DNA of 64,000 nucleotides, taken from positions 62,001 to 126,000 of IMG/VR virus record IMGVR_UViG_3300049048_000052; one strand, written 5' to 3'. Below, piece by piece: positions 5,863 through 62,480 of this stretch. Within the stretch, counting starts at the first letter, position 1; each line of letters begins with the position of its first letter. Below the pieces are notes generated by a model, which had not been told where the DNA came from, did no database searches, and saw nothing but the letters and a program-made list of their open reading frames with translations. The position numbers were made by a program, and so were the translations under genes.

Positions 5863-8800
5863 ATGGCTAAGAAGAAGATTAATAGGCCTAGTTCCTCAAA
5901 GAGGGGATTCGCCAGTAGTGGTAGCATAATAGGTGGCTTCGGCAGTCGAGGCCCCAAGGGTAGCTCTGCTTATGAGGTGTGGAAAGAGCTAGGTAATGAT
6001 GGGGACGAGCAGCAGTTCCTACTAAGTATTAGGGGACCTGTTGGTGGTCCAGGTAAGTCAGCATATGAAGTCTGGTTAGATGAAGGCAACACTGGAACAG
6101 TAGGTGATTTCATCTATGCGTTACGCCGTCTCTCAGGTGGGGATGGTATCTCAGCCTATGACATATGGTTATCACTTGGTAATGTTGGTACTGAGGAAGG
6201 ATTCCTACAATCACTTAAGGGACCAATGGGTCCACAGGGTCCTCAAGGTAAGTCAGCATACCAAGTATGGTTAGACCAGGGTGTTATAGGTACTGAGTCT
6301 GACTTTATAAATGCATTAAGGGGACCAGCTGGTCCCACTGGTCCTAGTGGAAGTGTAGGACCTACTGGTCCCATTGGGCCAACAGGTCCCCAAGGATCTA
6401 CTGGTTCGGCTGGCCCTCGGGGTGCTGATGGTGTTACTGGTAAGTCAGCATATCAGGTATGGCTTGACCTAGGTAATATGGGTACCGAGCAACAGTTCCT
6501 TAATTCATTAAGAGGAAGTAATGGTGCTCAGGGCCCCCAAGGTATACAAGGCGCAACTGGTGCTAATGGGGTAGATGGTGAGTCTGCCTATAGCCTATGG
6601 TTATCCTTGGGTAACATGGGTACCGAGGAAGAATTTCTAGCCTCCTTTGTAGGACCAATGGGTCCACAGGGTCCTCAAGGTATACAGGGTGAATCTGGTT
6701 TAACCGGACCTAAGGGAGATACTGGACCCATAGGTTTGACTGGACCACAGGGTATTCCTGGTGAAGTAGGACCTAAGGGAGATCAAGGTGATACTGGTCC
6801 AGCAGGACCACAAGGTCCCATTGGTGCTCAAGGTATACAGGGTATACAAGGTGAGGTAGGACCTGCTGGTTTAACTGGGCCAATAGGCCCTGTTGGTCCC
6901 ATTGGACCTAAGGGTGAACCAGGAGATACAGGACCTGAGGGTCCACAGGGAGTCCAGGGTATACAAGGTGAGATAGGACCTCAGGGTATTGAGGGCCCCA
7001 TCGGAGCAACAGGACCACAAGGACCCTTTGGAGACTCAGCATATCAAGTATGGTTATCAGAGGGTAACCTAGGATCTCCCACTGACTTCCTGGATTCCCT
7101 AATAGGTGCACAGGGACCAACAGGTGCAATAGGACCGCAGGGTGAGATTGGTCCCATCGGACCCCAAGGACCACAAGGTATTACTGGTGCGCCAGGTCCC
7201 CAGGGACCTGCTGGTAACAATGGTGCCATAGGTGCAACAGGTCCCAAGGGTGATACTGGTGATACCGGACCACAAGGACCAATGGGACCCGAGGGACCCC
7301 AAGGTATACAAGGATTAACCGGAGAGACTGGACCTAAGGGTGACACTGGAGATCAGGGTCCTCAGGGTATACAAGGATTGATAGGGGCAACAGGAGCAAC
7401 AGGCCCACAGGGACCTAAGGGTGACACTGGTGAGCAGGGTATACAAGGTATAGCTGGTGCTACAGGTGCCACTGGACCCCAAGGTATACAAGGACCTATA
7501 GGTCCCTCTGGACCTCAAGGTGCTACGGGTCCAGAGGGACCCACTGGTGCAACGGGGGCTACCGGACCCAAAGGGGATACAGGTGATTCAGCATATCAAG
7601 CATGGTTAGCAGCAGGTAATACGGGCACAGAGGCAGACTTTCTTGCCTCTCTAGTAGGACCTCAGGGTCCAACCGGCGCTACGGGAGCAACAGGACCAAT
7701 AGGACCTGAGGGACCAGCTGGCCCTCAAGGTCCTGGCTCAGGCGATGTAATGGGGCCTGCTAGTTCTACTGTTACTGGAATAGCTATCTTCAGTAGCAAT
7801 ACAGGTAAAGCTATACAAAGTTCCACTGTTACTATTGATGTAAGCAATAATCTTAGTACAGCAGGAAACTTAAGTACTACAGGATCTGGTTACATTAGTA
7901 CTGCAAGGCCCATATTTTTGGGTACCTATACAGTAGCGGGGTTACCTACAGCATCAAGTTGGACCAATGCCATTGCTATTGCTACTAATGCTAATGCAGG
8001 TAATGGTGCCGCAGTTAGATCTGATGGTGCTAACTGGATTGATATGAGTTCTAACAGAGCAGCGAGTACAGATATGAACTCAGCTATGTTTGGGGCTCAG
8101 AGCTTTACGCCTAATGGTATCCCCCGTACCAATGGTAACTCAAGTAGACAGTTATTAAGCTCAAATGTAACCATTGATGCTAACAATGTACTGACTATAC
8201 CGGCATCCGGTAACCTTAAATTAAATAGTCCTGCCTTCCTTGGTACATACACAGTAGCAGGACTACCTGCTGCCGCTAGTTGGACTAATGCAATCGCAAT
8301 TGCCACTAACGCTAATGGGGGTGGGGGCACTATTGCAAAGTCTAATGGAACCAGCTGGTTAGATATAGTACAAGGTAAGACGGTAACTACTGCTACTAAT
8401 ATCATACCTAGTATTGCATTATCAGATACTGCACCATCAAGCCCTAGCAATGGGGACTTCTGGTTTAACTCTAGTCAATTAAAGTTAAAGGTTAGATATT
8501 TTGATGGTACAAATACCCAGTGGGTAGATGTATTACCTACTGGAGGCAGTAGTAGTACTGGGGTAAGCGTAGGTGATGTTGCTCCTGCAAGTCCTACTAA
8601 TGGAGCCCTATGGTGGGATAGTACTGTAGGTAAGTTAAGAATATATTATACAGACAGTGACTCTAGCCAATGGGTGGATGCCACATGGAACGGTAATGTA
8701 TCTAACCTTCAACTGTCCTCAGGTACAGCAGGCTCGCCCTCCCTATCATTTAGTGGGGATACAGGTACAGGACTCTACTTAGCATCAGCAGGTAACCTGG

Positions 8801-9165
8801 GTATAAGGGCAGCGGATACAGTATGGGTTGGTTCAGGTACTACACCGGCCACCACTACTACCCCTATACAGTCAGGTACTACAGCTAAGGCATTCGGTAG
8901 GTTCGTTGGATCTACTGCTACCATTAGTAAGTCCTACAACGTCAGCTCAGTAGTAAGGAATAGTTTAGGGGCATACACTGTTAACTTTACCCAGGCTATG
9001 CCTGATGCTAACTTTATAGTGGTGGGTGCGGGTGAGGCAGGCTCCAATAACGTAGCTGATGTTGTGGTCTATGCAAGAACAACCACCTCTGTATCCCTAG
9101 GTATGACCTTTGGTAATGGTAATAACTATGATGCCACTGTTAACTTTGCTATATTCAGTAACTAA
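5863..9165 (+). CDS. collagen-like tail fibre / adhesin
   Basis: long Gly-X-Y tracts interrupted by 8 SAY(E/Q)xW..GN.GT..FL.SL blocks; cyanophage-like [14 protein letters not shown] repeats; fibre-tip-like C-terminus. Confidence 0.85.
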
Positions 9166-9167
9166 TT

Positions 9168-10145
9168 ATGCCAGTATCCTTTCCCGCGTCACCCACACTT
9201 AATCAAACCTTTGTAGCTAATAGTATCACCTACGTATGGGATGGTAGCTCATGGTCAGTAGTAACGGGACAGAACATGATAGCAGGGGGTACCATATCAG
9301 GTAACCTTGTTGTCACAGGTTCTATTACTGCAGCCACAGTTGCCGTCGGTAGTAATCAGGTGGTCCTACCTACTGATCTACCCTCTCTAATAGAGGGGCT
9401 AACCACAAGTAGGAATACGGGTACACAGATAACAGTAGCATCAGGTAGAGCTATAACGACAGATGCTACAGGTACTAGTCGTAGGGTAACAACATTATCT
9501 AGTGCCATTACTAAGAGTCTCAGTTCTAACTGGGTAGTAGGTAATAGTAATGGAGGGTTAGATACAGGGGCCCTAGCTGCGGCCGCCACTTATCATATAT
9601 TCCTTATAGATAATACGAGTAACGTTGATGTACTCCTATCCACTAGCCTCACTCCTACTATGCCATCAGGCTATACATTCAGGAGAAGGATAGGTTCTAT
9701 CACTACAAGTGCTAGTACGATAGTAGAGTATACACAACAGGCTAAGTACTTTGAGTATAAGAATGTTATTAATGCCTTTAATAATTACAACGTATCAGCT
9801 ACAGGTGAGCTGATAGTAATGCCTATACCAATAGGTATCAGGTTAAAGGTACGTGCCTTCTATAGTCCTGGATATTCCCTTAGTGGATATGAAACCAGCC
9901 AAGTATGCCTTAGTCCAGATGTAACACCATATAGCCTTGGCAATGATATGCCTGCCAGGCCTGCATTCGTAGGTACAGTAGGAGGTTACTATGGAAGTTA
10001 TACAGATACCAGTGGTATTGAGATAGAGAGGGTAACAGATACCAGTGGGAGACTGTACTTCAGGAGAAGCTCCTTTGGTTACCTAGCTGGTGGCCTAAAT
10101 CAAAGTACCTTCAGAGTATTAGGCTATGAAGATATCGGTCTATAA
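9168..10145 (+). CDS. tail fibre/spike protein
   Basis: N-terminal MPVSFPASPTLNQTF..TYVWDG motif typical of cyanophage fibres; paralogous to the next gene. Confidence 0.75.
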   Translation: MPVSFPASPTLNQTFVANSITYVWDGSSWSVVTGQNMIAGGTISGNLVVTGSITAATVAVGSNQVVLPTDLPSLIEGLTTSRNTGTQITVASGRAITTDATGTSRRVTTLSSAITKSLSSNWVVGNSNGGLDTGALAAAATYHIFLIDNTSNVDVLLSTSLTPTMPSGYTFRRRIGSITTSASTIVEYTQQAKYFEYKNVINAFNNYNVSATGELIVMPIPIGIRLKVRAFYSPGYSLSGYETSQVCLSPDVTPYSLGNDMPARPAFVGTVGGYYGSYTDTSGIEIERVTDTSGRLYFRRSSFGYLAGGLNQSTFRVLGYEDIGL

Positions 10146-21840: not shown

Positions 21841-22893
21841 TTGTCTTACCTAAGTGTAAAGACAGTGCGTAAATTAGCAAGTATACAGAAGATTGTAAGT
21901 GTAGAAGCCATTGAGGGTAAAGATAGAATAGTACAGTGTGGGGTCCTTGGCTGGTCAATGGTTACTCAGAAGTCTAATAACTTCCAAGTGGGTGACTACT
22001 GTGTGTTCTTTGAGATAGATAGTATATTACCTGAGGCAGAGTGGTCAGCCTTCTTAGAAGGTAAGACTAGGATCAGGACTAGGAAGTTTGGTGGTGTATT
22101 AGCACAAGGTCTCATGTTACCCATCGATGCTATACCTGAGGTAGAGTCACATCTACGTCAAGTGGATGGGGATATCGAAGGTCTAGATCTAACAGAGCTA
22201 TTAGGTGTAATACAATGGGAGCCTCCTGTTGATGCTAATACTGGTGAGAGTAGAGGTAACTTCCCTACCCATATCATTAGTAAGACCGATGAGATCAGGA
22301 TACAGAGTTGTCCTAAGGTCTTAGAGGAATTGAAGGGACTACCTTGGTATGCTGCCCTTAAGATGGATGGCTCCAGTGCTACCTACTTCTGGGATGATGC
22401 CCCGCCTAAGATGGATATGTCCCCAGGCTTTGTCAGTTGCTCACGTAATATGAGAAAGAGTGAGGACTCTCATTTCCATCAGGTTGCGCTGAGGTATGGA
22501 CTAGATGAGATATTGAAGACCAATGATTACCTAGTATTCCAGGGTGAGGTAGTAGGTCCAGGTATTCAAGCTAATAGGTTAGGACTTAAAGAGTTAGACC
22601 TATTCATATTTAACGTATATGACAGAAGGGAGAAGAGATACTTAACCCTATCTGAGGCTCTGCAAGTATGTAAGTTTGGTAAGCTCAAGCATGTACCCAT
22701 TATCGATCAAGGGGAGTCCTTTGATCTAACTCAGGAGGCATTAGTCCAAATGAGTATAGGTGAATATGAGGGCACTAAGAATCCTAGAGAGGGTATCGTA
22801 GTGCGCCCTCAGACTCCCGTCTATAGTAATGTATTGAGGGACAGACTGTCCTTCAAAGTAGTTAATCCTAATTATCTGTTGAAGTATGAATAG
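21841..22893 (+). CDS. ATP-dependent RNA ligase (Rnl2/DRB0094-like) with N-terminal OB-like domain
   Basis: motif I KMDGSS, FQGEVVGPGIQ, motif IV EGIVVR, motif V FKVVNPNYLLK; start probably GTG at ~21866. Confidence 0.9.
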   Translation: MSYLSVKTVRKLASIQKIVSVEAIEGKDRIVQCGVLGWSMVTQKSNNFQVGDYCVFFEIDSILPEAEWSAFLEGKTRIRTRKFGGVLAQGLMLPIDAIPEVESHLRQVDGDIEGLDLTELLGVIQWEPPVDANTGESRGNFPTHIISKTDEIRIQSCPKVLEELKGLPWYAALKMDGSSATYFWDDAPPKMDMSPGFVSCSRNMRKSEDSHFHQVALRYGLDEILKTNDYLVFQGEVVGPGIQANRLGLKELDLFIFNVYDRREKRYLTLSEALQVCKFGKLKHVPIIDQGESFDLTQEALVQMSIGEYEGTKNPREGIVVRPQTPVYSNVLRDRLSFKVVNPNYLLKYE

Positions 22894-32440: not shown

Positions 32441-33037
32441 ATGGGATGCTTTGATAGCACCTGTGCATTGACGAGGACCTCTATCCATCATGGTGACGAG
32501 GTCCTTTATGTTCAGGTTCAACCTGATGATGCAATGGACACCTATAGCTTAGTGCATGAATTCTGGAGAGTTAAAGCTCTAGCCAAATACCATGCAGAGT
32601 GTGAAGACTTAATAAAAGAGAACCCGGCACATGCTAAGTTATTTGAGATCCAAGAGCGGCAAGTTAGAAGGTTTATCCGTCATGTAGCCATTGGTATATA
32701 TGATGATTATGGCTCTATCGAGGGCTTTGATAACGAGGACAGTGTGACTAGAAGGGATTGGATGGAGTTTCAATTCATGATTCATAGGAAGGCGGCTGAG
32801 CTATTTCTAGGTGAGTCCTTGGATCCAAATAGTCTATTTGATCAGTTAGATAGGCTAGTAGAGAAGTGTTTCTCAGCTCGTATCCAACTCTTTGGTCATC
32901 ATCTTATAGGTGCCCAACACTTTGATAGGGAAGAGTTAGCTCTACAGGAGTTAGTGATTGAGGCTACTCAACTCATGATCAATGAGAAGAAAGAATATAT
33001 TAGAATCAATTGGGATGAAGATGATGAAGGACAATGA
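32441..33037 (+). CDS. conserved hypothetical phage protein
   Basis: MGCFD.TC..T..SI..GD.V N-terminus; YDDYG.IE motif. Confidence 0.7.
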   Translation: MGCFDSTCALTRTSIHHGDEVLYVQVQPDDAMDTYSLVHEFWRVKALAKYHAECEDLIKENPAHAKLFEIQERQVRRFIRHVAIGIYDDYGSIEGFDNEDSVTRRDWMEFQFMIHRKAAELFLGESLDPNSLFDQLDRLVEKCFSARIQLFGHHLIGAQHFDREELALQELVIEATQLMINEKKEYIRINWDEDDEGQ

Positions 33038-33209
33038 TGGATGTACTATTTTATGCAGACTCACTAGTAATGGGGAGTCTAAACGCATATGGTTACCCGA
33101 GTCTGAGGCTGTAGTAGGAAAAGAACTAGACCTTGAGACCGAGGGTCGTTGGACTTACAAGTGGTTAGTAGAAGAGATCAATCTTGATCCTAATATAGTA
33201 GAAGGATAG
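32982..33209 (+). CDS. hypothetical protein
   Basis: ORF track. Confidence 0.5.
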   Translation: MRRKNILESIGMKMMKDNDGCTILCRLTSNGESKRIWLPESEAVVGKELDLETEGRWTYKWLVEEINLDPNIVEG

Positions 33210-33540
33210 CTGATATATAAGGGCTCTCCTCGAAGAGCAATATAGGGAATCATTCTTGACCTGATGGTTCCCTTTCCTATTTACAATATTATAGAAGAGC
33301 CTAGGCTCACTGGTTTAGTAGTTGGATATTCCGGGGTCCCCATAAAGGACCCCTTTCTACATTAATTAATATATAAGGTCCCTTGTGATCGTCTCAAATC
33401 CCTAAATGTGGAGGGTCCCAACTAGGACCCTCTTTCTTATAGTAACTATTATATAAACCGCACCCCTCCCTTTGTGAACAATATAAGGGATGTCCTGAGG
33501 GGTGTGTTGATATGGGTAGACATCCCTATTTCTTAAACTA
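33210..33540 (+). ncRNA. second array of four putative small RNA units
   Basis: TATATAAG-like boxes at 33214, 33290, 33370 and 33450, each followed by 60-85 nt ending in a hairpin plus TTTC. Confidence 0.5.
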
Positions 33541-33552
33541 AGGATCAAGTAT

Positions 33553-34299
33553 ATGAATAAGCCACTATGGTTACACGCTCTCATAGCCCAGATAACTGAT
33601 ACTAAGAAGAGAGCGGAGGGCATCAAGAAGTCCGTATATCAGAAGTTACAGAAGGCTACTCTCTTCGTAGCTACACTAAAGGAGTACACCCCATTAGTAG
33701 AGGGAGGTATACAGTACACATCTGAGGGTACATCAATCGTACCTGAATCAGTACCTCTACTATTGGATGAGTTCAATGAGGCTGTCTCCAAACTATTAAA
33801 TGAGATGGCTACCCAGGATTGGGGCAATACAAAGGCTAAGGCCGATGTTATTATTGATGATATAGTTATTGTTAAGGATGCACCTGTAACATTCCTAATG
33901 GCGTTACAGAGTCAGCTAATTGATTATAGAACTTTGTTTGATCATGTACCCACTCTAAGTCCCGTGGACAAGTGGGAATATAATGCAGGTCAAATGGTAT
34001 GGAGCACACCAGCTACCATTACTAATAAGGAACAAGTAATTAAGGAGTGGGTACCTATCTTCCAACCTACAGAGCACCACCCAGGTGAGGCCAAGGAAGT
34101 ATCTAGGACAAAGCTAGAGGGTACATGGGAGAGCCGTAAGTTTAGTACTGCACTACTCCCTTCCCACAGGAAAGAATTGCTACAGAGGGTTGATAGACTA
34201 ATTGAGGCGGTAAAGGTGGCACGTGAGGAGGCCAACCGTATTCAAGTAGAACCCAAGGATGTAGCTACAAGTATCATTGGGTACCTAATGGGTGCCTGA
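33553..34299 (+). CDS. conserved uncharacterised coiled-coil protein (DUF7873-like by recall), cognate of the downstream tRNA-mimic RNA
   Basis: ATQDWGNTKAKADV..D...APVTFLMALQSQL.D...P...W; F.PTEHHP; G.W....FS.AL....ELL.RV..L.EAVK.AREEAN. Confidence 0.7.
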   Translation: MNKPLWLHALIAQITDTKKRAEGIKKSVYQKLQKATLFVATLKEYTPLVEGGIQYTSEGTSIVPESVPLLLDEFNEAVSKLLNEMATQDWGNTKAKADVIIDDIVIVKDAPVTFLMALQSQLIDYRTLFDHVPTLSPVDKWEYNAGQMVWSTPATITNKEQVIKEWVPIFQPTEHHPGEAKEVSRTKLEGTWESRKFSTALLPSHRKELLQRVDRLIEAVKVAREEANRIQVEPKDVATSIIGYLMGA

Positions 34300-34712
34300 T
34301 GGTAAACGGCGTAGGCTAAGGTTAAAGGTGTATAGGTAATAGTGTAGGTTCGAATCCTGCCCTTCCCATATATGGGAAGGTAGTCCAACTGGTAGAGACT
34401 GTCCAATACACTATATAAGACTGAGCATTAAGTTCAGATTATCGCCCTAGACTAAGTCTAAGGACAACAGCTCAGGTCGACTGTCTAGGACAACATTGAC
34501 CCACGTTGGTTCGAATCCAACCCAGGCCGCTTGGGGGCGACCCTATATGGGTAGGTAGCTGTCACACTTCTACCCCTTTCTTGGCCTGGTAGACTAGAGG
34601 TTAGTCAGGTCTTTATTAGATTGATCCTAGACAACTGGAAATGAGAATACTGAGATCACTGTTGATGGGGGATTACTAATGCAAGGCATACTGCATGGTA
34701 ATCCCCTTCCTA
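34300..34712 (+). ncRNA. tandem circularly permuted tRNA-mimic RNA (two YrlA-like modules)
   Basis: module 1: T arm 34344-60, closed acceptor CCTTCCCA-TATA-TGGGAAGG, D arm 34383-99; module 2: T arm 34505-21, CCAGGCC/GGCCTGG, D arm GACT-AGAGGTT-AGTC, closing TGTCTAGGA/TCCTAGACA; 3' hairpin GGGGATTAC/GTAATCCCC. Confidence 0.8.
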
Positions 34713-34734
34713 TTATTAATAAAGGAGAAAGAAG

Positions 34735-35034
34735 ATGGGCGCACATAGTACGTTGGACATAAGTAAGTCCGATGCAATTAGTCAGGTTACAAGATGGTTA
34801 GAAGAGAAGAAGGATAGGATCGTAAGGGATCCTAATAGTCTACTAACTAGGGCGCTCACTAAGTTTGAAGCCGAGAAGGCAAGGAAGTTCCTATTGGATG
34901 AGCCGTTAAATGAGGCTGAGTGGGAGGCACTCAAGGACTCCATACCTACTCTAAGTAGAGAGGAATTAGAAGTATTACTAGATAGGTTGGAGGAGGACCT
35001 GTATAACTATAATGTCATCGAGTGGGAGCATTAG
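34735..35034 (+). CDS. hypothetical protein
   Basis: AAGGAG RBS; MGAHSTLDIS...YN motif. Confidence 0.7.
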   Translation: MGAHSTLDISKSDAISQVTRWLEEKKDRIVRDPNSLLTRALTKFEAEKARKFLLDEPLNEAEWEALKDSIPTLSREELEVLLDRLEEDLYNYNVIEWEH

Positions 35035-35206
35035 GATCAACAGGGAGGAAGCCTTTGCCATTCTATGGCAGGAGGTTGCTATGAAACGTGATGTAATTAG
35101 TAATGAGACCTTAGGTCAACTAGTTAGTGTTATTAAGGGGGATGACTACGAAGTGGTAGATCCCCCATTGACTATAGATAAAGAGAGTAATGAATCTGAT
35201 ACGTAA
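35012..35206 (+). CDS. hypothetical protein
   Basis: ORF track. Confidence 0.5.
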   Translation: MSSSGSIRINREEAFAILWQEVAMKRDVISNETLGQLVSVIKGDDYEVVDPPLTIDKESNESDT

Positions 35207-35420
35207 AGTTGAGGCAGTTGGCCTCATTAAGACTTATTTGGAATCCAACAAGAAGAATATAGTCCTAGATGATGGAGGGATGGCCCTCTCTAATCTTGAT
35301 GGTATACCCATAAAAGATAACTGGGATAATACCTTCAGGGGTGTAGGTAGGTTAACTATCCCTGAGTTACAGGGGATACTCAATACAATAGATCCAACCT
35401 CAGGTTACAAAGTCATATGA
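35190..35420 (+). CDS. hypothetical protein
   Basis: ORF track. Confidence 0.55.
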   Translation: MNLIRKVEAVGLIKTYLESNKKNIVLDDGGMALSNLDGIPIKDNWDNTFRGVGRLTIPELQGILNTIDPTSGYKVI

Positions 35421-35642
35421 TCCCAGTAGAGATCGGGAGTCTACCCCATTGACATAGAGGAGTAGGTATCTCACAGTTTAGGAATTTGTCATCCTAGACC
35501 TTGGGGAGTCTCTTAGTAGGTAATAGGTACCTGATTGCTTGCTATATAGTTGTCCTTAATAATGGCCATTATCTCTGGACAATCTTGGTATTCGGGGGAG
35601 TATATCTCCCCTATTTTAATAATAGGAAGTTAAGGAGTAGTC

Positions 35643-36683: not shown

Positions 36684-37472
36684 ATGGATCTGGCAGTCAG
36701 GATCAAGGAATTCTATGAGTATGCATACCGCACCTTCCTACCCAGGAGGATGCCAGTCATACTTAGAGTAGATGGTAAGGCATTCCACTCTTATACAAGG
36801 GGTATGAATAGACCCTTTGATGAGAGATTGGAAGAAGTAATGAACCTTGTAGCTATTAAGCTATGTAAGGAAATACAAGGTGCTCAGATAGCCTATGTGC
36901 AATCTGATGAGATCAGTATATTAATTCATGGTTATAAGAAGCTCAATAGTGAGTCATGGTTTGGTAATAATGTACAGAAGATGACCAGTGTTAGTGCTGG
37001 TATAGCTAGTGCATGGTTTACCTACCACTCATCTAGGTTAACTACTGTATCTGAGGATATAGGTAATACCCAACAGTTTATAGAATCTAAGCTAAAGCCA
37101 GCAGTATTTGACTCTAGGGTATTCGTACTCCCTGAATCAGAGGTATGTAACTACTTCATATGGAGACAGCAGGATGCTACTCGCAATAGTATCTCTATGC
37201 TTGCCCAGTCTTTATACTCCCATAAGGAGTTAAATGGGGTTACATGTAATCAGATGCAGGAGCTCTGTTTCCAGAAGGGTCATAACTGGAATGATCTACC
37301 TATCATTAGAAAGAGGGGTAGATGTATTCGTAAGTTTATTAGGTATACACCTGTAGCTGGAAGACCTGAGGGTAATACAGTTGCTAGATCCTATTGGGAT
37401 GTAGACTATGAGACTCCTATCTTTACTGAGAATCGTAACTATATTGAAGATCTATTAAAGACATATGAGTAG
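36684..37472 (+). CDS. thg1: tRNA(His) guanylyltransferase Thg1/TLP
   Basis: RVDGKAFH, YVQSDEIS, FDSRV, NYF.WRQ.DA.RNSI. Confidence 0.93.
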   Translation: MDLAVRIKEFYEYAYRTFLPRRMPVILRVDGKAFHSYTRGMNRPFDERLEEVMNLVAIKLCKEIQGAQIAYVQSDEISILIHGYKKLNSESWFGNNVQKMTSVSAGIASAWFTYHSSRLTTVSEDIGNTQQFIESKLKPAVFDSRVFVLPESEVCNYFIWRQQDATRNSISMLAQSLYSHKELNGVTCNQMQELCFQKGHNWNDLPIIRKRGRCIRKFIRYTPVAGRPEGNTVARSYWDVDYETPIFTENRNYIEDLLKTYE

Positions 37473-39264: not shown

Positions 39265-39337
39265 AGGTAGCTGGTCCAATATAGGAACGGGCTGTCTCGA
39301 TAAGAGGCTATGCTAGGTTCGAATCCTAGGCTGCCTA
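39265..39337 (+). tRNA. degenerate tRNA-like gene (Ile GAU-like)
   Basis: AGGTAGC/GCTGCCT plus A; T arm CTAGG-TTCGAAT-CCTAG; bulged anticodon stem, C at position 33, aberrant D loop. Confidence 0.45.
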
Positions 39338-39356
39338 TTGGTAAATAGAATTAGTC

Positions 39357-39776: not shown

Positions 39777-39926
39777 ATACTGATAAAGATAAGGAACAAG
39801 AGCAAGAGGCCCAAGAGGAATCCATGGAGTCTGTCCTACAAAGGATAGAGGCTATTAAGGATGCTCAAGAGAAAGGTCTAGTTCAAGGTTAAAGATTAGG
39901 GAGTTAATGATAACTCCCTTATACAT

Positions 39927-39986
39927 GCCGCTGGATATGGTCAGGGACCTGATCACCCCTTGAGGTTCGATTCCTCACAGTTGGCT
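39927..39986 (+). ncRNA. minimal tRNA-like RNA (acceptor, one hairpin, T arm)
   Basis: GCCGCTG/CAGTTGGC; TGAGG-TTCGATT-CCTCA; single GGTCAG/CTGATC hairpin. Confidence 0.45.
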
Positions 39987-40026
39987 TCAGGAGATAATAT
40001 ATATCTCCTATCTAAAGGGTATTAAT

Positions 40027-40140
40027 GAGGGGGCCACCCGACCCTAGGTTCGAATCCTAGTTACGCCATCCGGCTGCGTAATGGCTGAGTGGCTAAAAGC
40101 AGGTAGTAGGAAAATCCTACTCATCGTCGGGAGCCTCCTC
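40027..40140 (+). ncRNA. YrlA-like circularly permuted tRNA mimic
   Basis: GAGGGGGC..CCCGAC/GTCGGG..GCCTCCTC closing stem; T arm CTAGG-TTCGAAT-CCTAG; closed acceptor TTACGC-N9-GCGTAA; D arm TG-GCT-GAGTGGCTAAA-AGC. Confidence 0.75.
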
Positions 40141-40161
40141 TTCAATACCCTTTCTTATTGA

Positions 40162-50117: not shown

Positions 50118-50396
50118 ATGAAACCAGGACCTAAGAAGGGTAGTAGTCAGAGTAAATCCCATGTTGCCAAGAGGGCCAAGGCTGTAAAAGGTAAGGCCAA
50201 TGGTATGTTTAAGGATGGAAGACGTTCCTATCGTTCCATAGCGGGAGCTAGGAATAGCGATGGAAAAGTTGTGCATCACAAGGACGGTGATAGGACCAAT
50301 AATTCAAGATCTAATCTAAAGGTCCTGAATGATGGTCCTAGTAGGCCAGGTAGGAAGACAACTAGTAAGCATGAAAGACTTACTAGACGTAAGTAG
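50118..50396 (+). CDS. small HNH endonuclease-like protein
   Basis: VVHHKDGDRTNNSRSNLKVL. Confidence 0.75.
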   Translation: MKPGPKKGSSQSKSHVAKRAKAVKGKANGMFKDGRRSYRSIAGARNSDGKVVHHKDGDRTNNSRSNLKVLNDGPSRPGRKTTSKHERLTRRK

Positions 50397-50567
50397 CCAG
50401 TGTAGCTTAAAAGGTAAAGCGTACCCCTCTCAGGGTATACCGAAAGGGTCCATAGGTAATAGGTGTAGTTGCAAGATTCTGTGAGAGTTATAAACTCCGT
50501 ATTCGGCAGAGTCCCAGACTGCACAACTATACCTATGGATATGAGGGTTCGATCCCCTTCACTGGCG
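50396..50567 (+). ncRNA. 172-nt tRNA-like RNA with a giant variable-region domain
   Basis: GCCAGTG/CACTGGC plus G; D arm GCTT-AAAAGGTA-AAGC; TACCC-CTCTCA-GGGTA; inserted helices TCCATAGGTA/TACCTATGGA, GTGTAGT/ACTGCAC, GATTCTG/CAGAGTC; T arm GAGGG-TTCGATC-CCCTT. Confidence 0.78.
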
Positions 50568-58429: not shown

Positions 58430-58489
58430 ATCTTAGGGCGTAAGCCCTTATTCATTCCTCAGTGGCGCAGTGGATAGCGCACCCGCCTT

Positions 58490-59179
58490 TAGGATAGGAG
58501 CACTTCTAGGGGAAACCCTTAAAGTGAATGTGGTTAAATTCAGGGAAGACTAAGTAGATTATGATCAAACTCCCAATGACAGTTAGGACATAGAGGTACT
58601 AAGTTGTCTACAGAGTTAATGTCGTTAACTAAGGTTTCATGTGGAAAACTAGAGATGGCCTTTCTATGGGCTATTTCAACATGTTTGTTATACCCACAGT
58701 TAATACAACAAGACCAGTCGAGTTTTGCTGCTACAGCTCTAGCCCTTGCTCTAACTAAAGCATAGGCTGAGGACCTGTGATGTTTATTGTACATGGCTTC
58801 TTCTAAAGTGACATTTAGATTTAGTCCCTTACGATGAGATCCAAAGCAGGATTTACAGTAGGTTCTGGAGTTACTTATAGGAGTGGTGCATACCAAGCAT
58901 TTATTCTCGGGTTTCCTCTTGGGGAAATTACGATTATTATGTGTAGCAGCACAACTCTTACTACAGAACTTAGGGTTAGTTGTTTCCTTATTACAGTTGA
59001 GACAATTCATAGTTTATATGTTAATCCTGAGCCAAGCTATTCGAAAGCCCTATTATATCATGGGTTCGAATAGAAGGTGCAGAGACTTAACAGCCACCAC
59101 CTAAGGTCATAAGACTATGGTGAAGATAAAGTCCAGACTACAAACACTCTTGAGTGGCAGCTAAAGCTGTAGTAGGAGG
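58490..59179 (+). mobile_element. group I intron (tRNA-Leu(UAA)-intron-like) inserted after U34
   Basis: P AAATTCAGGGAA 58536, Q AATCCTGAGC 59023, R GTGCAGAGACT 59077, S AAGATAAAGTCC 59123; P1 CTT/GAG, P10 TAG/CTA; terminal G59179. Confidence 0.88.
58540..59010 (-). CDS. intron-encoded HNH homing endonuclease (antisense)
   Basis: Cys-rich Zn fingers; CINCG..VEIAH..N...NLVPLCPNCH.EFD. Confidence 0.85.
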   Translation of the reverse strand: MNCLNCNKETTNPKFCSKSCAATHNNRNFPKRKPENKCLVCTTPISNSRTYCKSCFGSHRKGLNLNVTLEEAMYNKHHRSSAYALVRARARAVAAKLDWSCCINCGYNKHVEIAHRKAISSFPHETLVNDINSVDNLVPLCPNCHWEFDHNLLSLP

Positions 59180-62328: not shown

Positions 62329-62402
62329 GTCCCTGTGGTCCAACTGGTAGAGGTAACGGACTTAAAATCCGTGTGTTGTGGGTTCGAATCCCACCAGGGA
62401 CA
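62329..62402 (+). tRNA. trnL: tRNA-Leu(UAA) with short variable loop
   Basis: GTCCCTG/CAGGGAC plus A; ACGGA-CTTAAAA-TCCGT; 5-nt variable loop; T arm GTGGG-TTCGAAT-CCCAC. Confidence 0.85.
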
Positions 62403-62405
62403 TTT

Positions 62406-62480
62406 GCCGCAGTAGCCCAATTGGGTAGAGGCTGTAGGTTGAGGGCTTACATGTTACAGGTTCAAATCCTGTCTGCGGTA
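62406..62480 (+). tRNA. trnL: tRNA-Leu(GAG) with short variable loop
   Basis: GCCGCAG/CTGCGGT plus A; TGTAGG-TTGAGGG-CTTACA; T arm ACAGG-TTCAAAT-CCTGT. Confidence 0.75.

What the first reader, a model, noticed from the sequence alone, without database searches (positions are those of the whole stretch)
33553..34712. Candidate new ribonucleoprotein system: coiled-coil gene followed by an RNA with two permuted tRNA elbows and repeated linker motifs
Seen: directly after the stop of the 248-aa gene lies ~400 nt with no ORF, containing two modules ordered T arm, acceptor stem, D arm (a circular permutation of tRNA). In module 1 the acceptor is sealed by a TATA loop (CCTTCCCA/TGGGAAGG). In module 2 the acceptor (CCAGGCC/GGCCTGG) carries a 54-nt insert and sits on a long stem (TGTCTAGGA/TCCTAGACA; GACC/GGTC). 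Neither has an anticodon loop or free CCA, so neither can be charged. The linkers repeat an RCTRAG motif (AGGCTAAG 34313, AGACTGAG 34418, AGACTAAG 34449, ATACTGAG 34647). Established: bacterial YrlA Y RNAs have this T-AS-D topology and normally partner Ro60/TROVE; no TROVE gene is in this window. Inference: the uncharacterised upstream protein (DUF7873-like by my recall) binds the repeats and displays tRNA elbows as decoys or tethers for tRNA-recognising nucleases, toxins or ligases. A TATATAAG box at 34412 suggests module 2 may also be transcribed separately.
Basis: partly seen in the sequence, partly recalled or inferred. Interest (0 to 1): 0.92.

Follow-up and report, generated by a model that had tools for sequence, protein, structure and literature searches.

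The report
Unknown protein paired with double tRNA-mimic RNA
Next to a protein gene of unknown function (DUF7873) lies a roughly 400-base non-coding RNA built from two rearranged tRNA look-alikes, and this gene pair recurs, undescribed, in hundreds of bacterial species and many phages, so it is probably a new RNA-protein particle related in design to bacterial Y RNAs.

Summary
Window 33553-34299 encodes a Pfam DUF7873 protein (E 1e-59). The ORF-free stretch 34300-34717 holds two circularly permuted tRNA-like modules (T arm, closed 7-bp acceptor, D arm).

A covariance model built only from other loci scores module 1 at 61.6 bits (E 1.5e-19). About 150 DUF7873 loci, from viral contigs and from cellular genomes of at least five phyla, carry the same two-module RNA beside the gene. 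Covariation is heavy. No other gene is conserved nearby.

- No Rfam family covers this RNA. Only YrlA gives a sub-threshold hit.
- No paper in the searched library mentions DUF7873.
- No TROVE/Ro60 gene lies in the window, in any locus, or in the complete Gordonia phage GodonK genome.

That implies RNase P cleavage and CCA tailing, so "cannot be charged" is doubtful.

Protein-RNA binding and function are untested. Most family members sit among cellular housekeeping genes, which weakens the anti-defence decoy idea. The separate TATA promoter is unsupported.

The parts
33553..34299 (+). DUF7873 protein gene (248 aa)
   Evidence: Pfam PF25283, E 1.2e-59, 202.5 bits. The family has 2693 clusters at 50% identity, all about 245 aa. 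AF2 model: pLDDT 94.7, mixed alpha/beta. No Foldseek match with E<=0.001 in the PDB or BFVD libraries.
34300..34326 (+). RNA leader with tandem hexads (GGCTAA 34314-34319, GGTTAA 34320-34325)
   Evidence: Sequence. This is the family-wide hexad zone, 24-48 nt before T loop 1. The spacing peak at exactly 6 nt has 132 cases against 3 expected.
34327..34413 (+). Permuted tRNA-like module 1: outer stem 34327-34333/34406-34412, T arm 34344-34360, closed 7-bp acceptor 34361-34380 (loop ATATAT), U8A9, D arm 34383-34399
   Evidence: R1 gives 61.6 bits, E 1.5e-19, full length, with the window excluded from the model. Rfam YrlA gives 26.8 bits. ARAGORN calls no tRNA here.
34414..34481 (+). Linker: hexad copies at 34421, 34428, 34433, 34452, 34458, 34471; conserved box ATTATCGCCC 34438-34447; GGTCGAC 34475-34481 (5' side of the conserved internal loop)
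   Evidence: Sequence. The box and the GATCGA element are conserved in the 24-locus alignment.
34482..34633 (+). Permuted tRNA-like module 2 on a long stem: stem 34482-34490/34625-34633, GACC/GGTC 34498-34501/34608-34611, T arm 34505-34521, acceptor 34522-34528/34583-34589 with 54-nt insert 34529-34582, D arm 34592-34606
   Evidence: R1 gives 21.3 bits, E 1e-5, for T arm plus acceptor across the insert. The MFE fold forms these stems. The equivalent long stem in the family is 88.6% paired, with covariation 1.03 against at most 0.18 when slid.
34634..34665 (+). 3' tail: ACTGGAAATGAG (34634-34645), the window/L002 variant of the family CTTAAACG box; CTGAG 34650-34654 can pair with CTCAG 34471-34475
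   Evidence: Sequence. The box is near-invariant (TTAAA) in 24 loci. The variant CAACCGGAAAT occurs in the closest relative, L002. The CTCAG/CTGAG pairing is my inference.
34666..34717 (+). Terminator-like hairpin (GGGGATTAC 34668-34676 / GTAATCCCC 34698-34706) followed by TTCCTATTATT
   Evidence: Formed in the MFE fold. Its loop is too long for the simple terminator scan. Its role as a terminator is inferred.

Best explanation
The window holds one member of an undescribed two-gene module: a DUF7873 protein and a dedicated structured non-coding RNA of about 350-420 nt.

The RNA is a Y-RNA-like (YrlA-type) tRNA mimic with two circularly permuted tRNA-like domains. Each domain runs anticodon-stem 3' strand, variable region, T arm, closed 7-bp acceptor stem, U8, D arm, anticodon-stem 5' strand. 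The domains are joined by tracts of a 6-nt periodic motif (consensus R-R-Y-U-N-A). The second domain stands on a long stem with a conserved internal loop (GAUCGA opposite CUUAAACG; the window has a variant).

Shown: the RNA structure, its covariation, its near-universal adjacency to DUF7873 in phages and bacteria, and the absence of a Ro60/TROVE gene in the window, within 4 kb of the gene in about 160 loci, and in one complete phage genome.

Inferred mechanism:
1. The RNA is transcribed after, or independently of, the gene and ends at a hairpin terminator.
2. The tRNA-like domains fold into L-shapes that tRNA enzymes recognise.
3. RNase P opens the acceptor loops, and the 3' ends are trimmed and CCA-tailed. 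This leaves a nicked, base-paired RNA with two free acceptor ends.
4. DUF7873, probably as an oligomer, binds the hexad tracts and/or the conserved internal loop to form a stable particle.

By analogy with Ro60-Y RNA, the particle would couple DUF7873 to tRNA-recognising factors or tRNA-related substrates, in RNA surveillance, repair or translation-linked control. Phages would have picked it up from hosts along with tRNA arrays and tmRNA.
For: - Protein family: PF25283; 2693 clusters.
- Association, viral loci: in about 66 of 69 viral loci, R1 finds module hits beside the gene. Usually there are two hits, 143-175 nt apart.
- Association, cellular loci: the same holds in nearly all of 80 cellular loci from Cyanobacteria, Actinomycetes, Myxococcota, Chloroflexota and Planctomycetota.
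- No conserved protein neighbour in either set.
- The RNA is its own gene. It lies upstream of the protein gene in L054 and on the opposite strand in L024, L110 and L135.
- Covariation: 40 of 44 RNAalifold pairs show compensatory changes. In the seed set the T and acceptor stems are 97-99% paired and the covariation score is 0.73 against 0.20 in shuffles. In an independent set of 96 cellular modules the score is 0.67 against 0.19. The long stem, which played no part in my selection, is 88.6% paired with score 1.03 against at most 0.34.
- Hexads: 3-fold enrichment and a sharp 6-nt spacing peak.
- Processing signals: discriminator A in 84/104 loci for module 1 and U in 76/104 for module 2; the next base is C in about 80-90% of loops; full NCCA in 24 (module 1) and 42 (module 2) of 104 loci, against 1/64 by chance; U8 in 185/208.
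- Precedent: the 7-bp-stem YrlA of M. smegmatis is cut by RNase P and CCA-tailed in vivo (PMC4201824; bioRxiv 10.1101/312249).
- No Ro60. GodonK complete genome.
- Syntenic contrast: Gordonia phage Forza has a Ro-like gene next to the syntenic tmRNA/tRNA array and no gene between tRNA-Asp and tRNA-Leu. GodonK has DUF7873 plus the RNA at that spot and no Ro.
- Shared element: the 3' box CTTAAACGCCGGTGG also occurs in the Ro-linked YrlA of phage Bxz1.
Against: - No experiment shows that the RNA is expressed or that DUF7873 binds it. Adjacency alone cannot prove a complex.
- The protein is mildly acidic (median pI 6.4, net charge -2). It has no recognisable RNA-binding domain or structural relative.
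- It carries conserved His, Asp and Glu residues, which would also fit an enzyme.
- T-stem and acceptor pairing statistics are partly circular. My detector and model select for these stems.
- The window's own acceptor loops lack CCA, and its 3' box deviates from the family consensus.
- Hosts may encode Ro60, which could bind the RNA.
Confidence: 0.6

Rival explanations
1. DUF7873 is an enzyme and the RNA is its substrate, cofactor or product. For example, it could process or modify the tRNA-like domains, or use their CCA (possibly aminoacylated) ends the way aminoacyl-tRNA-dependent transferases use tRNA.
For: - Conserved His176, the T-x-x-HPAQ motif, and many conserved acidic residues in an acidic protein.
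- Module-specific conserved discriminator bases and encoded CCA point to functional acceptor ends.
- The family is abundant in Actinomycetes, Cyanobacteria and Myxococcota.
Against: - No similarity to any known catalytic fold or family.
- The hexad repeats and the conserved internal loop look like binding platforms rather than substrates.
- No G3:U70 pair or other clear synthetase identity set was found.
Confidence: 0.15
2. One reading: a phage counter-defence decoy. The RNP displays tRNA elbows to soak up or tether host tRNA-targeting nucleases or toxins.
For: - Phage copies sit in tRNA arrays with tmRNA.
- Some loci or the window carry RNA repair genes: RtcB, PNKP, RNA ligase, Thg1.
- The modules lack an anticodon loop, so anticodon nucleases could bind them without cutting.
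Against: - At least 566 bacterial species carry the pair, typically among housekeeping genes: ABC and MFS transporters, pheT, a lysyl-tRNA-synthetase fusion, homocysteine synthesis.
- No hits to defence-system models.
- No conserved defence or anti-defence neighbours.
Confidence: 0.1
3. It is an ordinary Ro60-dependent Y RNA (a YrlA/YrlB-like pair) that works with a host or distant Ro60. DUF7873 is an accessory factor or merely linked.
For: - YrlA is the only Rfam family with any match.
- The 3' box is shared with the Ro-linked YrlA of Bxz1.
- Near-matches to the GNCGAA motif: GGCTAAGG and GGTCGAC.
- M. smegmatis makes YrlA and YrlB from one precursor (PMC4201824).
Against: - No TROVE gene within 4 kb in about 160 loci, and none in the complete GodonK genome.
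- Phage genera with Ro and phage genera with DUF7873 are almost disjoint.
- The Rfam score is far below the gathering score in the window, and no YrlA hit reaches it in 34 other loci.
- DUF7873 is the only constant neighbour.
Confidence: 0.08
4. The tRNA-like structures are a cis-acting 3' processing or stability element of the DUF7873 mRNA (RNase P-mediated 3' end formation, as for MALAT1/mascRNA), not a functional RNA partner.
For: - The RNA usually starts within 30-150 nt of the stop codon on the same strand.
- RNase P-type features are present.
Against: - The RNA is upstream of the gene or on the opposite strand in several loci (L054, L024, L110, L135).
- About 350 nt of conserved architecture, with two modules, hexads and an internal loop, is far more than a processing signal needs.
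- A promoter is annotated between the gene and the RNA in phage vB_KpM_FBKp24.
Confidence: 0.04
5. Chance resemblance, decayed tRNA genes, or a tandem-tRNA junction artefact.
For: Tandem tRNA junctions do score with the model. An example is window 62362-62445 at 36.3 bits. Chen et al. 2014 noted the same artefact.
Against: - The acceptor stems are closed hairpins, not two separate tRNAs.
- ARAGORN and the Rfam tRNA model find no tRNA there.
- Scores of 50-84 bits occur almost only next to DUF7873 genes.
- Compensatory changes are extensive across phyla.
Confidence: 0.01

Closest known systems
YrlA / bacterial Y RNA with Ro60 (Rsr), Rfam RF02553
   Same: - A circularly permuted tRNA-like domain (T arm, closed acceptor-like stem, D arm) on a long stem.
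- Encoded beside its protein partner.
- Found in bacteria and in phages that carry tRNA arrays.
- A 3' box is shared with the phage Bxz1 YrlA.
- Sometimes two RNAs come from one precursor.
   Different: - The partner gene is DUF7873, an alpha/beta protein of about 245 aa, not the roughly 550-aa TROVE/vWA ring.
- There are two full tRNA-like domains in one RNA.
- Hexad-repeat linkers are present.
- 7-bp acceptors with an encoded discriminator-C(CA) are the rule rather than the exception.
- The Rfam model scores 26.8 bits against a gathering score of 69.
Mycobacterium smegmatis YrlA (RNase P-cleaved, CCA-tailed Y RNA; PMC4201824)
   Same: A 7-bp acceptor stem closed by a loop. In M. smegmatis it is cleaved by RNase P and given a CCA end, leaving a two-piece RNA.
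   Different: Processing here is inferred from sequence only. The M. smegmatis RNA is bound by Rsr and has one full tRNA-like domain.
Two-piece (permuted) tmRNA with SmpB
   Same: - Gene order: T arm, acceptor 3' strand, CCA, spacer, acceptor 5' strand.
- The spacer is processed out.
- A small dedicated protein gene often lies adjacent.
   Different: - No G3:U70 pair.
- No match to tmRNA models or ARAGORN.
- A full D arm is present.
- There are two tRNA-like domains.
- Several of these phages carry a separate tmRNA.
TRAP-type and HutP-type proteins that read periodically spaced short RNA motifs
   Same: Short purine-containing motifs repeat at a fixed 5-6 nt period in single-stranded tracts. 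This fits one motif per subunit of an oligomer.
   Different: No fold or sequence relation was shown. The tracts are short (2-4 tandem copies in three zones). This comparison comes from my own knowledge and is an analogy only.
VIPR systems (RAMP protein plus tandem-repeat vrRNA; bioRxiv 10.64898/2026.04.26.720920)
   Same: A small stand-alone protein gene in phages, flanked by a non-coding RNA with short tandem repeats.
   Different: - VIPR repeats are GGY/NN pentads, 9-16 copies, in RNAs under 100 nt with no tRNA-like domain.
- Vipr is a roughly 20-kDa RAMP.
- Foldseek gave only weak Cas7 hits for DUF7873, and the second model did not reproduce them.

Membership tests
DUF7873 (Pfam PF25283) | Match to the Pfam HMM above its gathering score over the full length | tested here: met
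   202.5 bits against a cut-off of 27; residues 7-246 of 248. All 61 aligned relatives also match.
YrlA / Y RNA-like (Rfam RF02553) | tRNA-like domain in the permuted order T arm, acceptor-like stem-loop, D arm, enclosed by a stem | tested here: met
   Full-length alignment to the YrlA model with all helices. R1 gives 61.6 bits.
YrlA / Y RNA-like (Rfam RF02553) | Score at or above Rfam's gathering threshold (69 bits) | tested here: not met
   26.8 bits in the window. No YrlA hit at the gathering score in 17 viral or 17 cellular loci.
YrlA / Y RNA-like (Rfam RF02553) | Encoded within about 4 kb of a Ro60/TROVE gene, on the same strand (criterion of Chen et al. 2014) | tested here: not met
   No TROVE among the large ORFs. 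tblastn with two phage Ro proteins finds nothing in the window, the 80 viral loci, the 80 cellular loci or the whole GodonK genome.
YrlA / Y RNA-like (Rfam RF02553) | GNCGAAN0-1G motif near the 5' end (the presumed Ro60 contact) | tested here: inconclusive
   The aligned position reads GGCUAAGG, with U where G is expected. GGUCGAC at 34475-34481 and the family GAUCGA(A/C) are near-matches only.
YrlA / Y RNA-like (Rfam RF02553) | Bound by Ro60/Rsr in vivo | not testable with these tools
   Needs immunoprecipitation.
tRNA | Contiguous cloverleaf with an anticodon loop and free acceptor ends | tested here: not met
   ARAGORN and the Rfam tRNA model call nothing at 34300-34717. The order is permuted and the anticodon stems run on into linkers.
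tmRNA, including permuted two-piece forms | Match to tmRNA models | tested here: not met
   No ARAGORN or Rfam tmRNA, alpha_tmRNA or tmRNA_permuted hit on this RNA. The same tools do find separate tmRNAs in neighbouring parts of L009, L031, L036, L039 and L056.
tmRNA, including permuted two-piece forms | G3:U70 alanine identity pair in the acceptor stem | tested here: not met
   That pair (columns 38/53 of A4) is U-G in 1 of 32 modules. The rest are G-C or C-G.
Permuted tRNA genes (Cyanidioschyzon type) | 3' half encoded upstream of the 5' half, joined through the acceptor ends | tested here: met
   T arm and 3' acceptor strand precede the 5' acceptor strand and D arm. The discriminator-C(CA) is encoded at the junction in most family members.
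Permuted tRNA genes (Cyanidioschyzon type) | Termini that reconstitute an anticodon stem-loop, giving a decoding tRNA | tested here: not met
   The anticodon-stem strands continue into conserved hexad linkers and a long stem. No anticodon loop can be drawn. A bulge-helix-bulge motif was not searched for.
VIPR / RAMP protein with tandem-repeat RNA | RAMP (Cas7-like) fold of the protein | tested here: inconclusive
The second model gave one, at E 0.64. No Pfam or PADLOC RAMP match.
VIPR / RAMP protein with tandem-repeat RNA | vrRNA made of 9-16 GGY/NN pentad repeats | tested here: not met
   The repeats here are R-R-Y-U-N-A hexads, 2-4 in tandem, in three zones.

The most novel reading that the evidence does not exclude
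DUF7873 and its RNA form a previously unrecognised, widespread class of bacterial and phage ribonucleoprotein. An oligomeric protein reads 6-nt periodic tracts on an RNA scaffold. The scaffold carries two RNase P-processed, CCA-tailed tRNA-like heads with different conserved discriminators (A and U), and these may even be aminoacylated. Such a double-headed tRNA mimic would engage synthetases, EF-Tu, ribosomes or tRNA-dependent enzymes, with a function unrelated to Ro60.
Probability: 0.25. Interest if true: 0.92.

Novelty: new variant of a known kind. Interest (0 to 1): 0.8.

Why it matters
tRNA-like Y RNAs were known only as partners of Ro60. Here the same RNA design, doubled and elaborated, is tied to a different and wholly uncharacterised protein family. 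The pair occurs in hundreds of bacterial species and in cultured phages of Gordonia, Klebsiella, Vibrio, Rhizobium and cyanobacteria.

- It gives DUF7873 its first functional lead.
- It adds a large structured RNA family that is missing from Rfam.
- It corrects annotations: the region is called a suppressor tRNA in one record and a small reverse ORF in another.
- It reopens the question of what tRNA mimicry does for bacterial non-coding RNPs, including whether such mimics carry working acceptor ends.

Tractable hosts and phages exist, so the question can be tested directly.

Tried and rejected
1. PHROGs scan of the protein and eight neighbours: no family.
2. PADLOC, and Pfam at relaxed E-values, on 61 family members: nothing besides DUF7873.
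3. PDB sequence-profile search: only noise.
4. Foldseek of two independent AF2 models against PDB and BFVD: no hit at E<=0.001. The second model did not reproduce them, so I dropped it as evidence.
5. Rfam at gathering score on the window and 34 loci, and at relaxed E-value on the locus: only a sub-threshold YrlA hit.
6. Sigma-70 promoter scan: no + strand promoter at the TATATAAG box or elsewhere in 33000-35500.
7. Conserved protein neighbours in 160 loci: none. RtcB, PNKP, a DHH-family protein and AAA ATPases occur only in small subsets.
8. Leader and linker hexads pairing with each other: rejected as a general rule. In several loci the copies are direct repeats of the same sense.
9. tmRNA-like reading: rejected (no G3:U70, no model hit).
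10. Literature: no paper mentions DUF7873, and none describes a two-domain tRNA-like RNA without Ro60.
11. Not done: the rest of the 251,780-bp source contig outside the window could not be fetched, so a distant TROVE gene in this particular phage is not excluded.
Full report
**1. What is in the window**

The window is part of IMG/VR contig IMGVR_UViG_3300049048_000052, a 251,780-bp phage-like contig. It is rich in tRNA genes and contains a group I intron.

ORF 33553-34299 (+) encodes 248 aa and matches Pfam DUF7873 over its whole length (E 1.2e-59). From the stop codon to the next gene (ATG at 34735) there is no ORF apart from a 54-aa antisense one.

ARAGORN and the Rfam tRNA model call nothing here. 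The only Rfam family that responds is YrlA. It aligns end to end with module 1 at 26.8 bits, far below its gathering score of 69.

**2.

A profile search of viral contigs returned 80 loci encoding DUF7873 relatives of 27-39% identity.

- The strict T-loop 11-mer GGTTCRANTCC lies 30-150 nt after the stop in most of them. A second copy usually follows about 150-170 nt later. ARAGORN does not call these as tRNAs.
- A simple detector showed that each T arm is followed by a closed 7-bp hairpin, a U, and a D arm.
- I built a covariance model (R1) from 32 such modules, leaving the window out.

R1 results:

| Target | Result |
|---|---|
| Window module 1 | 61.6 bits, E 1.5e-19 |
| Window module 2 | 21.3 bits (T arm plus acceptor, across the 54-nt insert) |
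| 69 viral loci | about 66 have hits beside the gene, usually two |
| 80 cellular genome loci | nearly all have two hits just after the gene |
| Klebsiella jumbo phage vB_KpM_FBKp24 | 49.5 and 50.6 bits |

The cellular loci come from Anabaena, Nostoc, Chamaesiphon, Actinomadura, Plantactinospora, Nonomuraea, Frankia, Streptomyces, Nocardia, myxobacteria, Ktedonobacteria, Planctomycetota and Armatimonadota. An exhaustive profile search counts 2693 protein clusters at 50% identity.

**3. The RNA is the only constant neighbour**

All-against-all clustering of flanking ORFs finds no other protein family shared by more than a handful of loci, in either the viral or the cellular set. Small subsets carry RtcB, PNKP, a DHH-family protein or an AAA ATPase. 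The window itself has a Thg1-like gene and an RNA ligase some kilobases away. Cellular neighbours are ordinary housekeeping genes.

In L054 the RNA lies upstream of the gene. In L024, L110 and L135 it lies on the opposite strand. It is therefore a gene of its own, not a 3' UTR.

**4. Structure and covariation**

A MAFFT alignment of the whole RNA from 24 loci gives an RNAalifold consensus with T arm, acceptor and D arm for both modules, plus a 13-bp interrupted stem around module 2. Of 44 pairs, 40 show compensatory changes.

| Test set | Paired | Covariation score | Controls |
|---|---|---|---|
| 32-module seed | T stem 99%, acceptor 97% | 0.73 | 0.20 in shuffles (0/500); at most 0.27 when slid |
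| 96 cellular modules, not used to build R1 | T stem 99.8%, acceptor 98.8% | 0.67 | 0.19 in shuffles; at most 0.20 when slid |
| Long stem around module 2 | 88.6% | 1.03 | at most 0.18 when slid; at most 0.34 in 500 shuffles |

I flag that my detector and model select for T and acceptor pairing, so those figures are partly circular. The long stem played no part in the selection and is the independent test.

**5.

(a) The RCTRAG motif is family-wide. RVYTNAR occurs 6.1 times per 430 nt of RNA, against 2.1 in shuffles and 1.5 inside the gene. Successive copies are spaced by exactly 6 nt in 132 cases (3 expected), with further peaks at 12 and 19 nt. The copies cluster in the leader, in the linker and after module 2. 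The window has nine copies.

(b) Between the linker hexads lies a conserved box (ATTATCGCTC; ATTATCGCCC in the window). The lower stem of module 2 carries a conserved internal loop, GAUCGA opposite CUUAAACG. The window and its closest relative L002 have a variant of the 3' side. The same CTTAAACGCCGGTGG box follows the D arm of the Ro-linked YrlA of mycobacteriophage Bxz1.

(c) In 104 loci with two modules, the base after the 3' acceptor strand is A in module 1 (84/104) and U in module 2 (76/104). The next base is C in about 80-90% of loops. Full NCCA is encoded 24 times (module 1) and 42 times (module 2), against a chance rate of 1/64. U8 is kept in 185 of 208 modules.

[quoted passage not shown] The likely mature form is therefore a nicked RNA with two free acceptor ends. 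This is inference. The window's own loops (ATATAT, and a 54-nt insert) encode no CCA, which would have to be added.

**6. The protein**

Two AlphaFold models built from deep alignments are confident: pLDDT 94.7 for the window protein and 90.6 for an Actinomadura member. They show long N- and C-terminal helices around a beta-alpha-beta-beta-alpha-beta core, plus a long beta hairpin.

- Foldseek finds no match with E <= 0.001 in PDB or BFVD.
- Sequence profiles find nothing in PDB, Pfam, PHROGs or PADLOC.
- The family is slightly acidic. It has conserved Lys/Arg on the hairpin, conserved Trp and His, and a T-x-x-HPAQ motif.

Neither RNA binding nor catalysis can be read off the sequence.

**7. 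Relation to Ro60**

No TROVE protein was found in the window, within 4 kb of the gene in about 160 loci, or in the complete genome of Gordonia phage GodonK.

Among cultured phages, DUF7873 occurs in 73 records: Vibrio 29, Gordonia 12, Rhizobium 10, Klebsiella 7, Serratia 6, Arthrobacter 3, Pseudanabaena 2 and others. Ro-like proteins occur mainly in Mycobacterium, Streptomyces and Microbacterium phages.

Two Gordonia phages with syntenic tRNA arrays differ in a telling way:

- Forza has a Ro-like gene beside tRNA-Asn and tmRNA, and nothing between tRNA-Asp and tRNA-Leu.
- GodonK has no Ro, and has DUF7873 plus the RNA exactly there.

This fits the two systems being alternatives. It is a single pair of genomes.

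**8. Interpretation**

The best-supported reading is a dedicated ribonucleoprotein of YrlA-like design with a new protein partner. It is cellular in origin and was borrowed by large phages together with tRNAs and tmRNA.

The binding site (hexads or internal loop), the oligomeric state, processing, aminoacylation and biological role are all inferred or open. The anti-defence decoy idea is weakened by the cellular housekeeping context. An enzymatic role for DUF7873 is the strongest rival.

**9. Novelty**

No Rfam family covers the RNA. No paper in the searched library mentions DUF7873 or such an RNA.

Existing records mis-annotate the region. GodonK lists a 129-nt reverse ORF there. vB_KpM_FBKp24 lists a "tRNA-Sup-TTA". 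The recent VIPR systems are a different thing.

Noticed in passing
window 39893-40161 (module at 40028-40113; lone T arm about 39958-39976): A third permuted tRNA-like module with no DUF7873 gene beside it. R1 gives 34.7 bits, E 2.7e-10. It has T arm CTAGG/CCTAG, closed acceptor TTACGC/GCGTAA, a D arm, and then a closed hairpin AGTAGGA-AAA-TCCTACT. Another T-arm-like hairpin precedes it in the same ORF-free stretch.
   Followed up: partly
window 39267-39343: A tRNA-like sequence with a perfect T arm (39313-39329) and a G-U-rich acceptor. Neither ARAGORN nor Rfam calls it at gathering score.
   Followed up: no
window 50396-50567: An Rfam tRNA hit (38.7 bits) spanning 172 nt. This would be a tRNA gene with an insert of about 100 nt, possibly an intron. 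ARAGORN does not call it.
   Followed up: no
window 58479-59155: A group I intron (Rfam 54.1 bits) with a large insertion. A 156-aa ORF lies on the opposite strand at 58540-59010. The host gene was not identified.
   Followed up: no
window 36684-37472 and 21841-22893: A Thg1-like tRNA-His guanylyltransferase and an RNA ligase with a PHA02142 OB domain. Together they are a tRNA repair and editing toolkit in the same phage region.
   Followed up: partly
window 5863-9165 and 9168-10145: A 1100-aa protein with collagen triple-helix repeats, followed by a 325-aa protein with a sub-threshold match to the Mtd second domain (22.7 bits against a cut-off of 24.6). Mtd is the variable tail protein of diversity-generating retroelements.
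   Followed up: no
L015:4001-4720: The DUF7873 homologue in this viral contig has an in-frame stop at codon 10 of the aligned region. Its two-module RNA is intact. Possible explanations are a downstream start, recoding or a sequencing error.
   Followed up: no
L167:2466-2825 (Klebsiella phage vB_KpM_FBKp24, NC_061421): The record annotates a "tRNA-Sup-TTA" at 2682-2761, overlapping module 2 of the DUF7873-linked RNA (R1 hits at 2518-2607 and 2718-2825). It also annotates a promoter between gp365 and the RNA. The suppressor tRNA call is probably a misreading of the permuted module.
   Followed up: partly
L039:1375-1903 / GodonK record 84631-85159: Rfam finds a 529-nt tmRNA here (90.3 bits). The GenBank record annotates only a 62-nt "tRNA-His" (gene 165, 85019-85080) inside it. 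The tmRNA appears to be unannotated in GodonK.
   Followed up: no
L083:5274-5353 (Gordonia phage Forza): A single YrlA-like permuted module (R1 31.3 bits) sits inside the tRNA array, about 1.2 kb downstream of the Ro-like gene. It is followed by GCGCUAAAAACCCGG, a variant of the CTTAAACG box.
   Followed up: no
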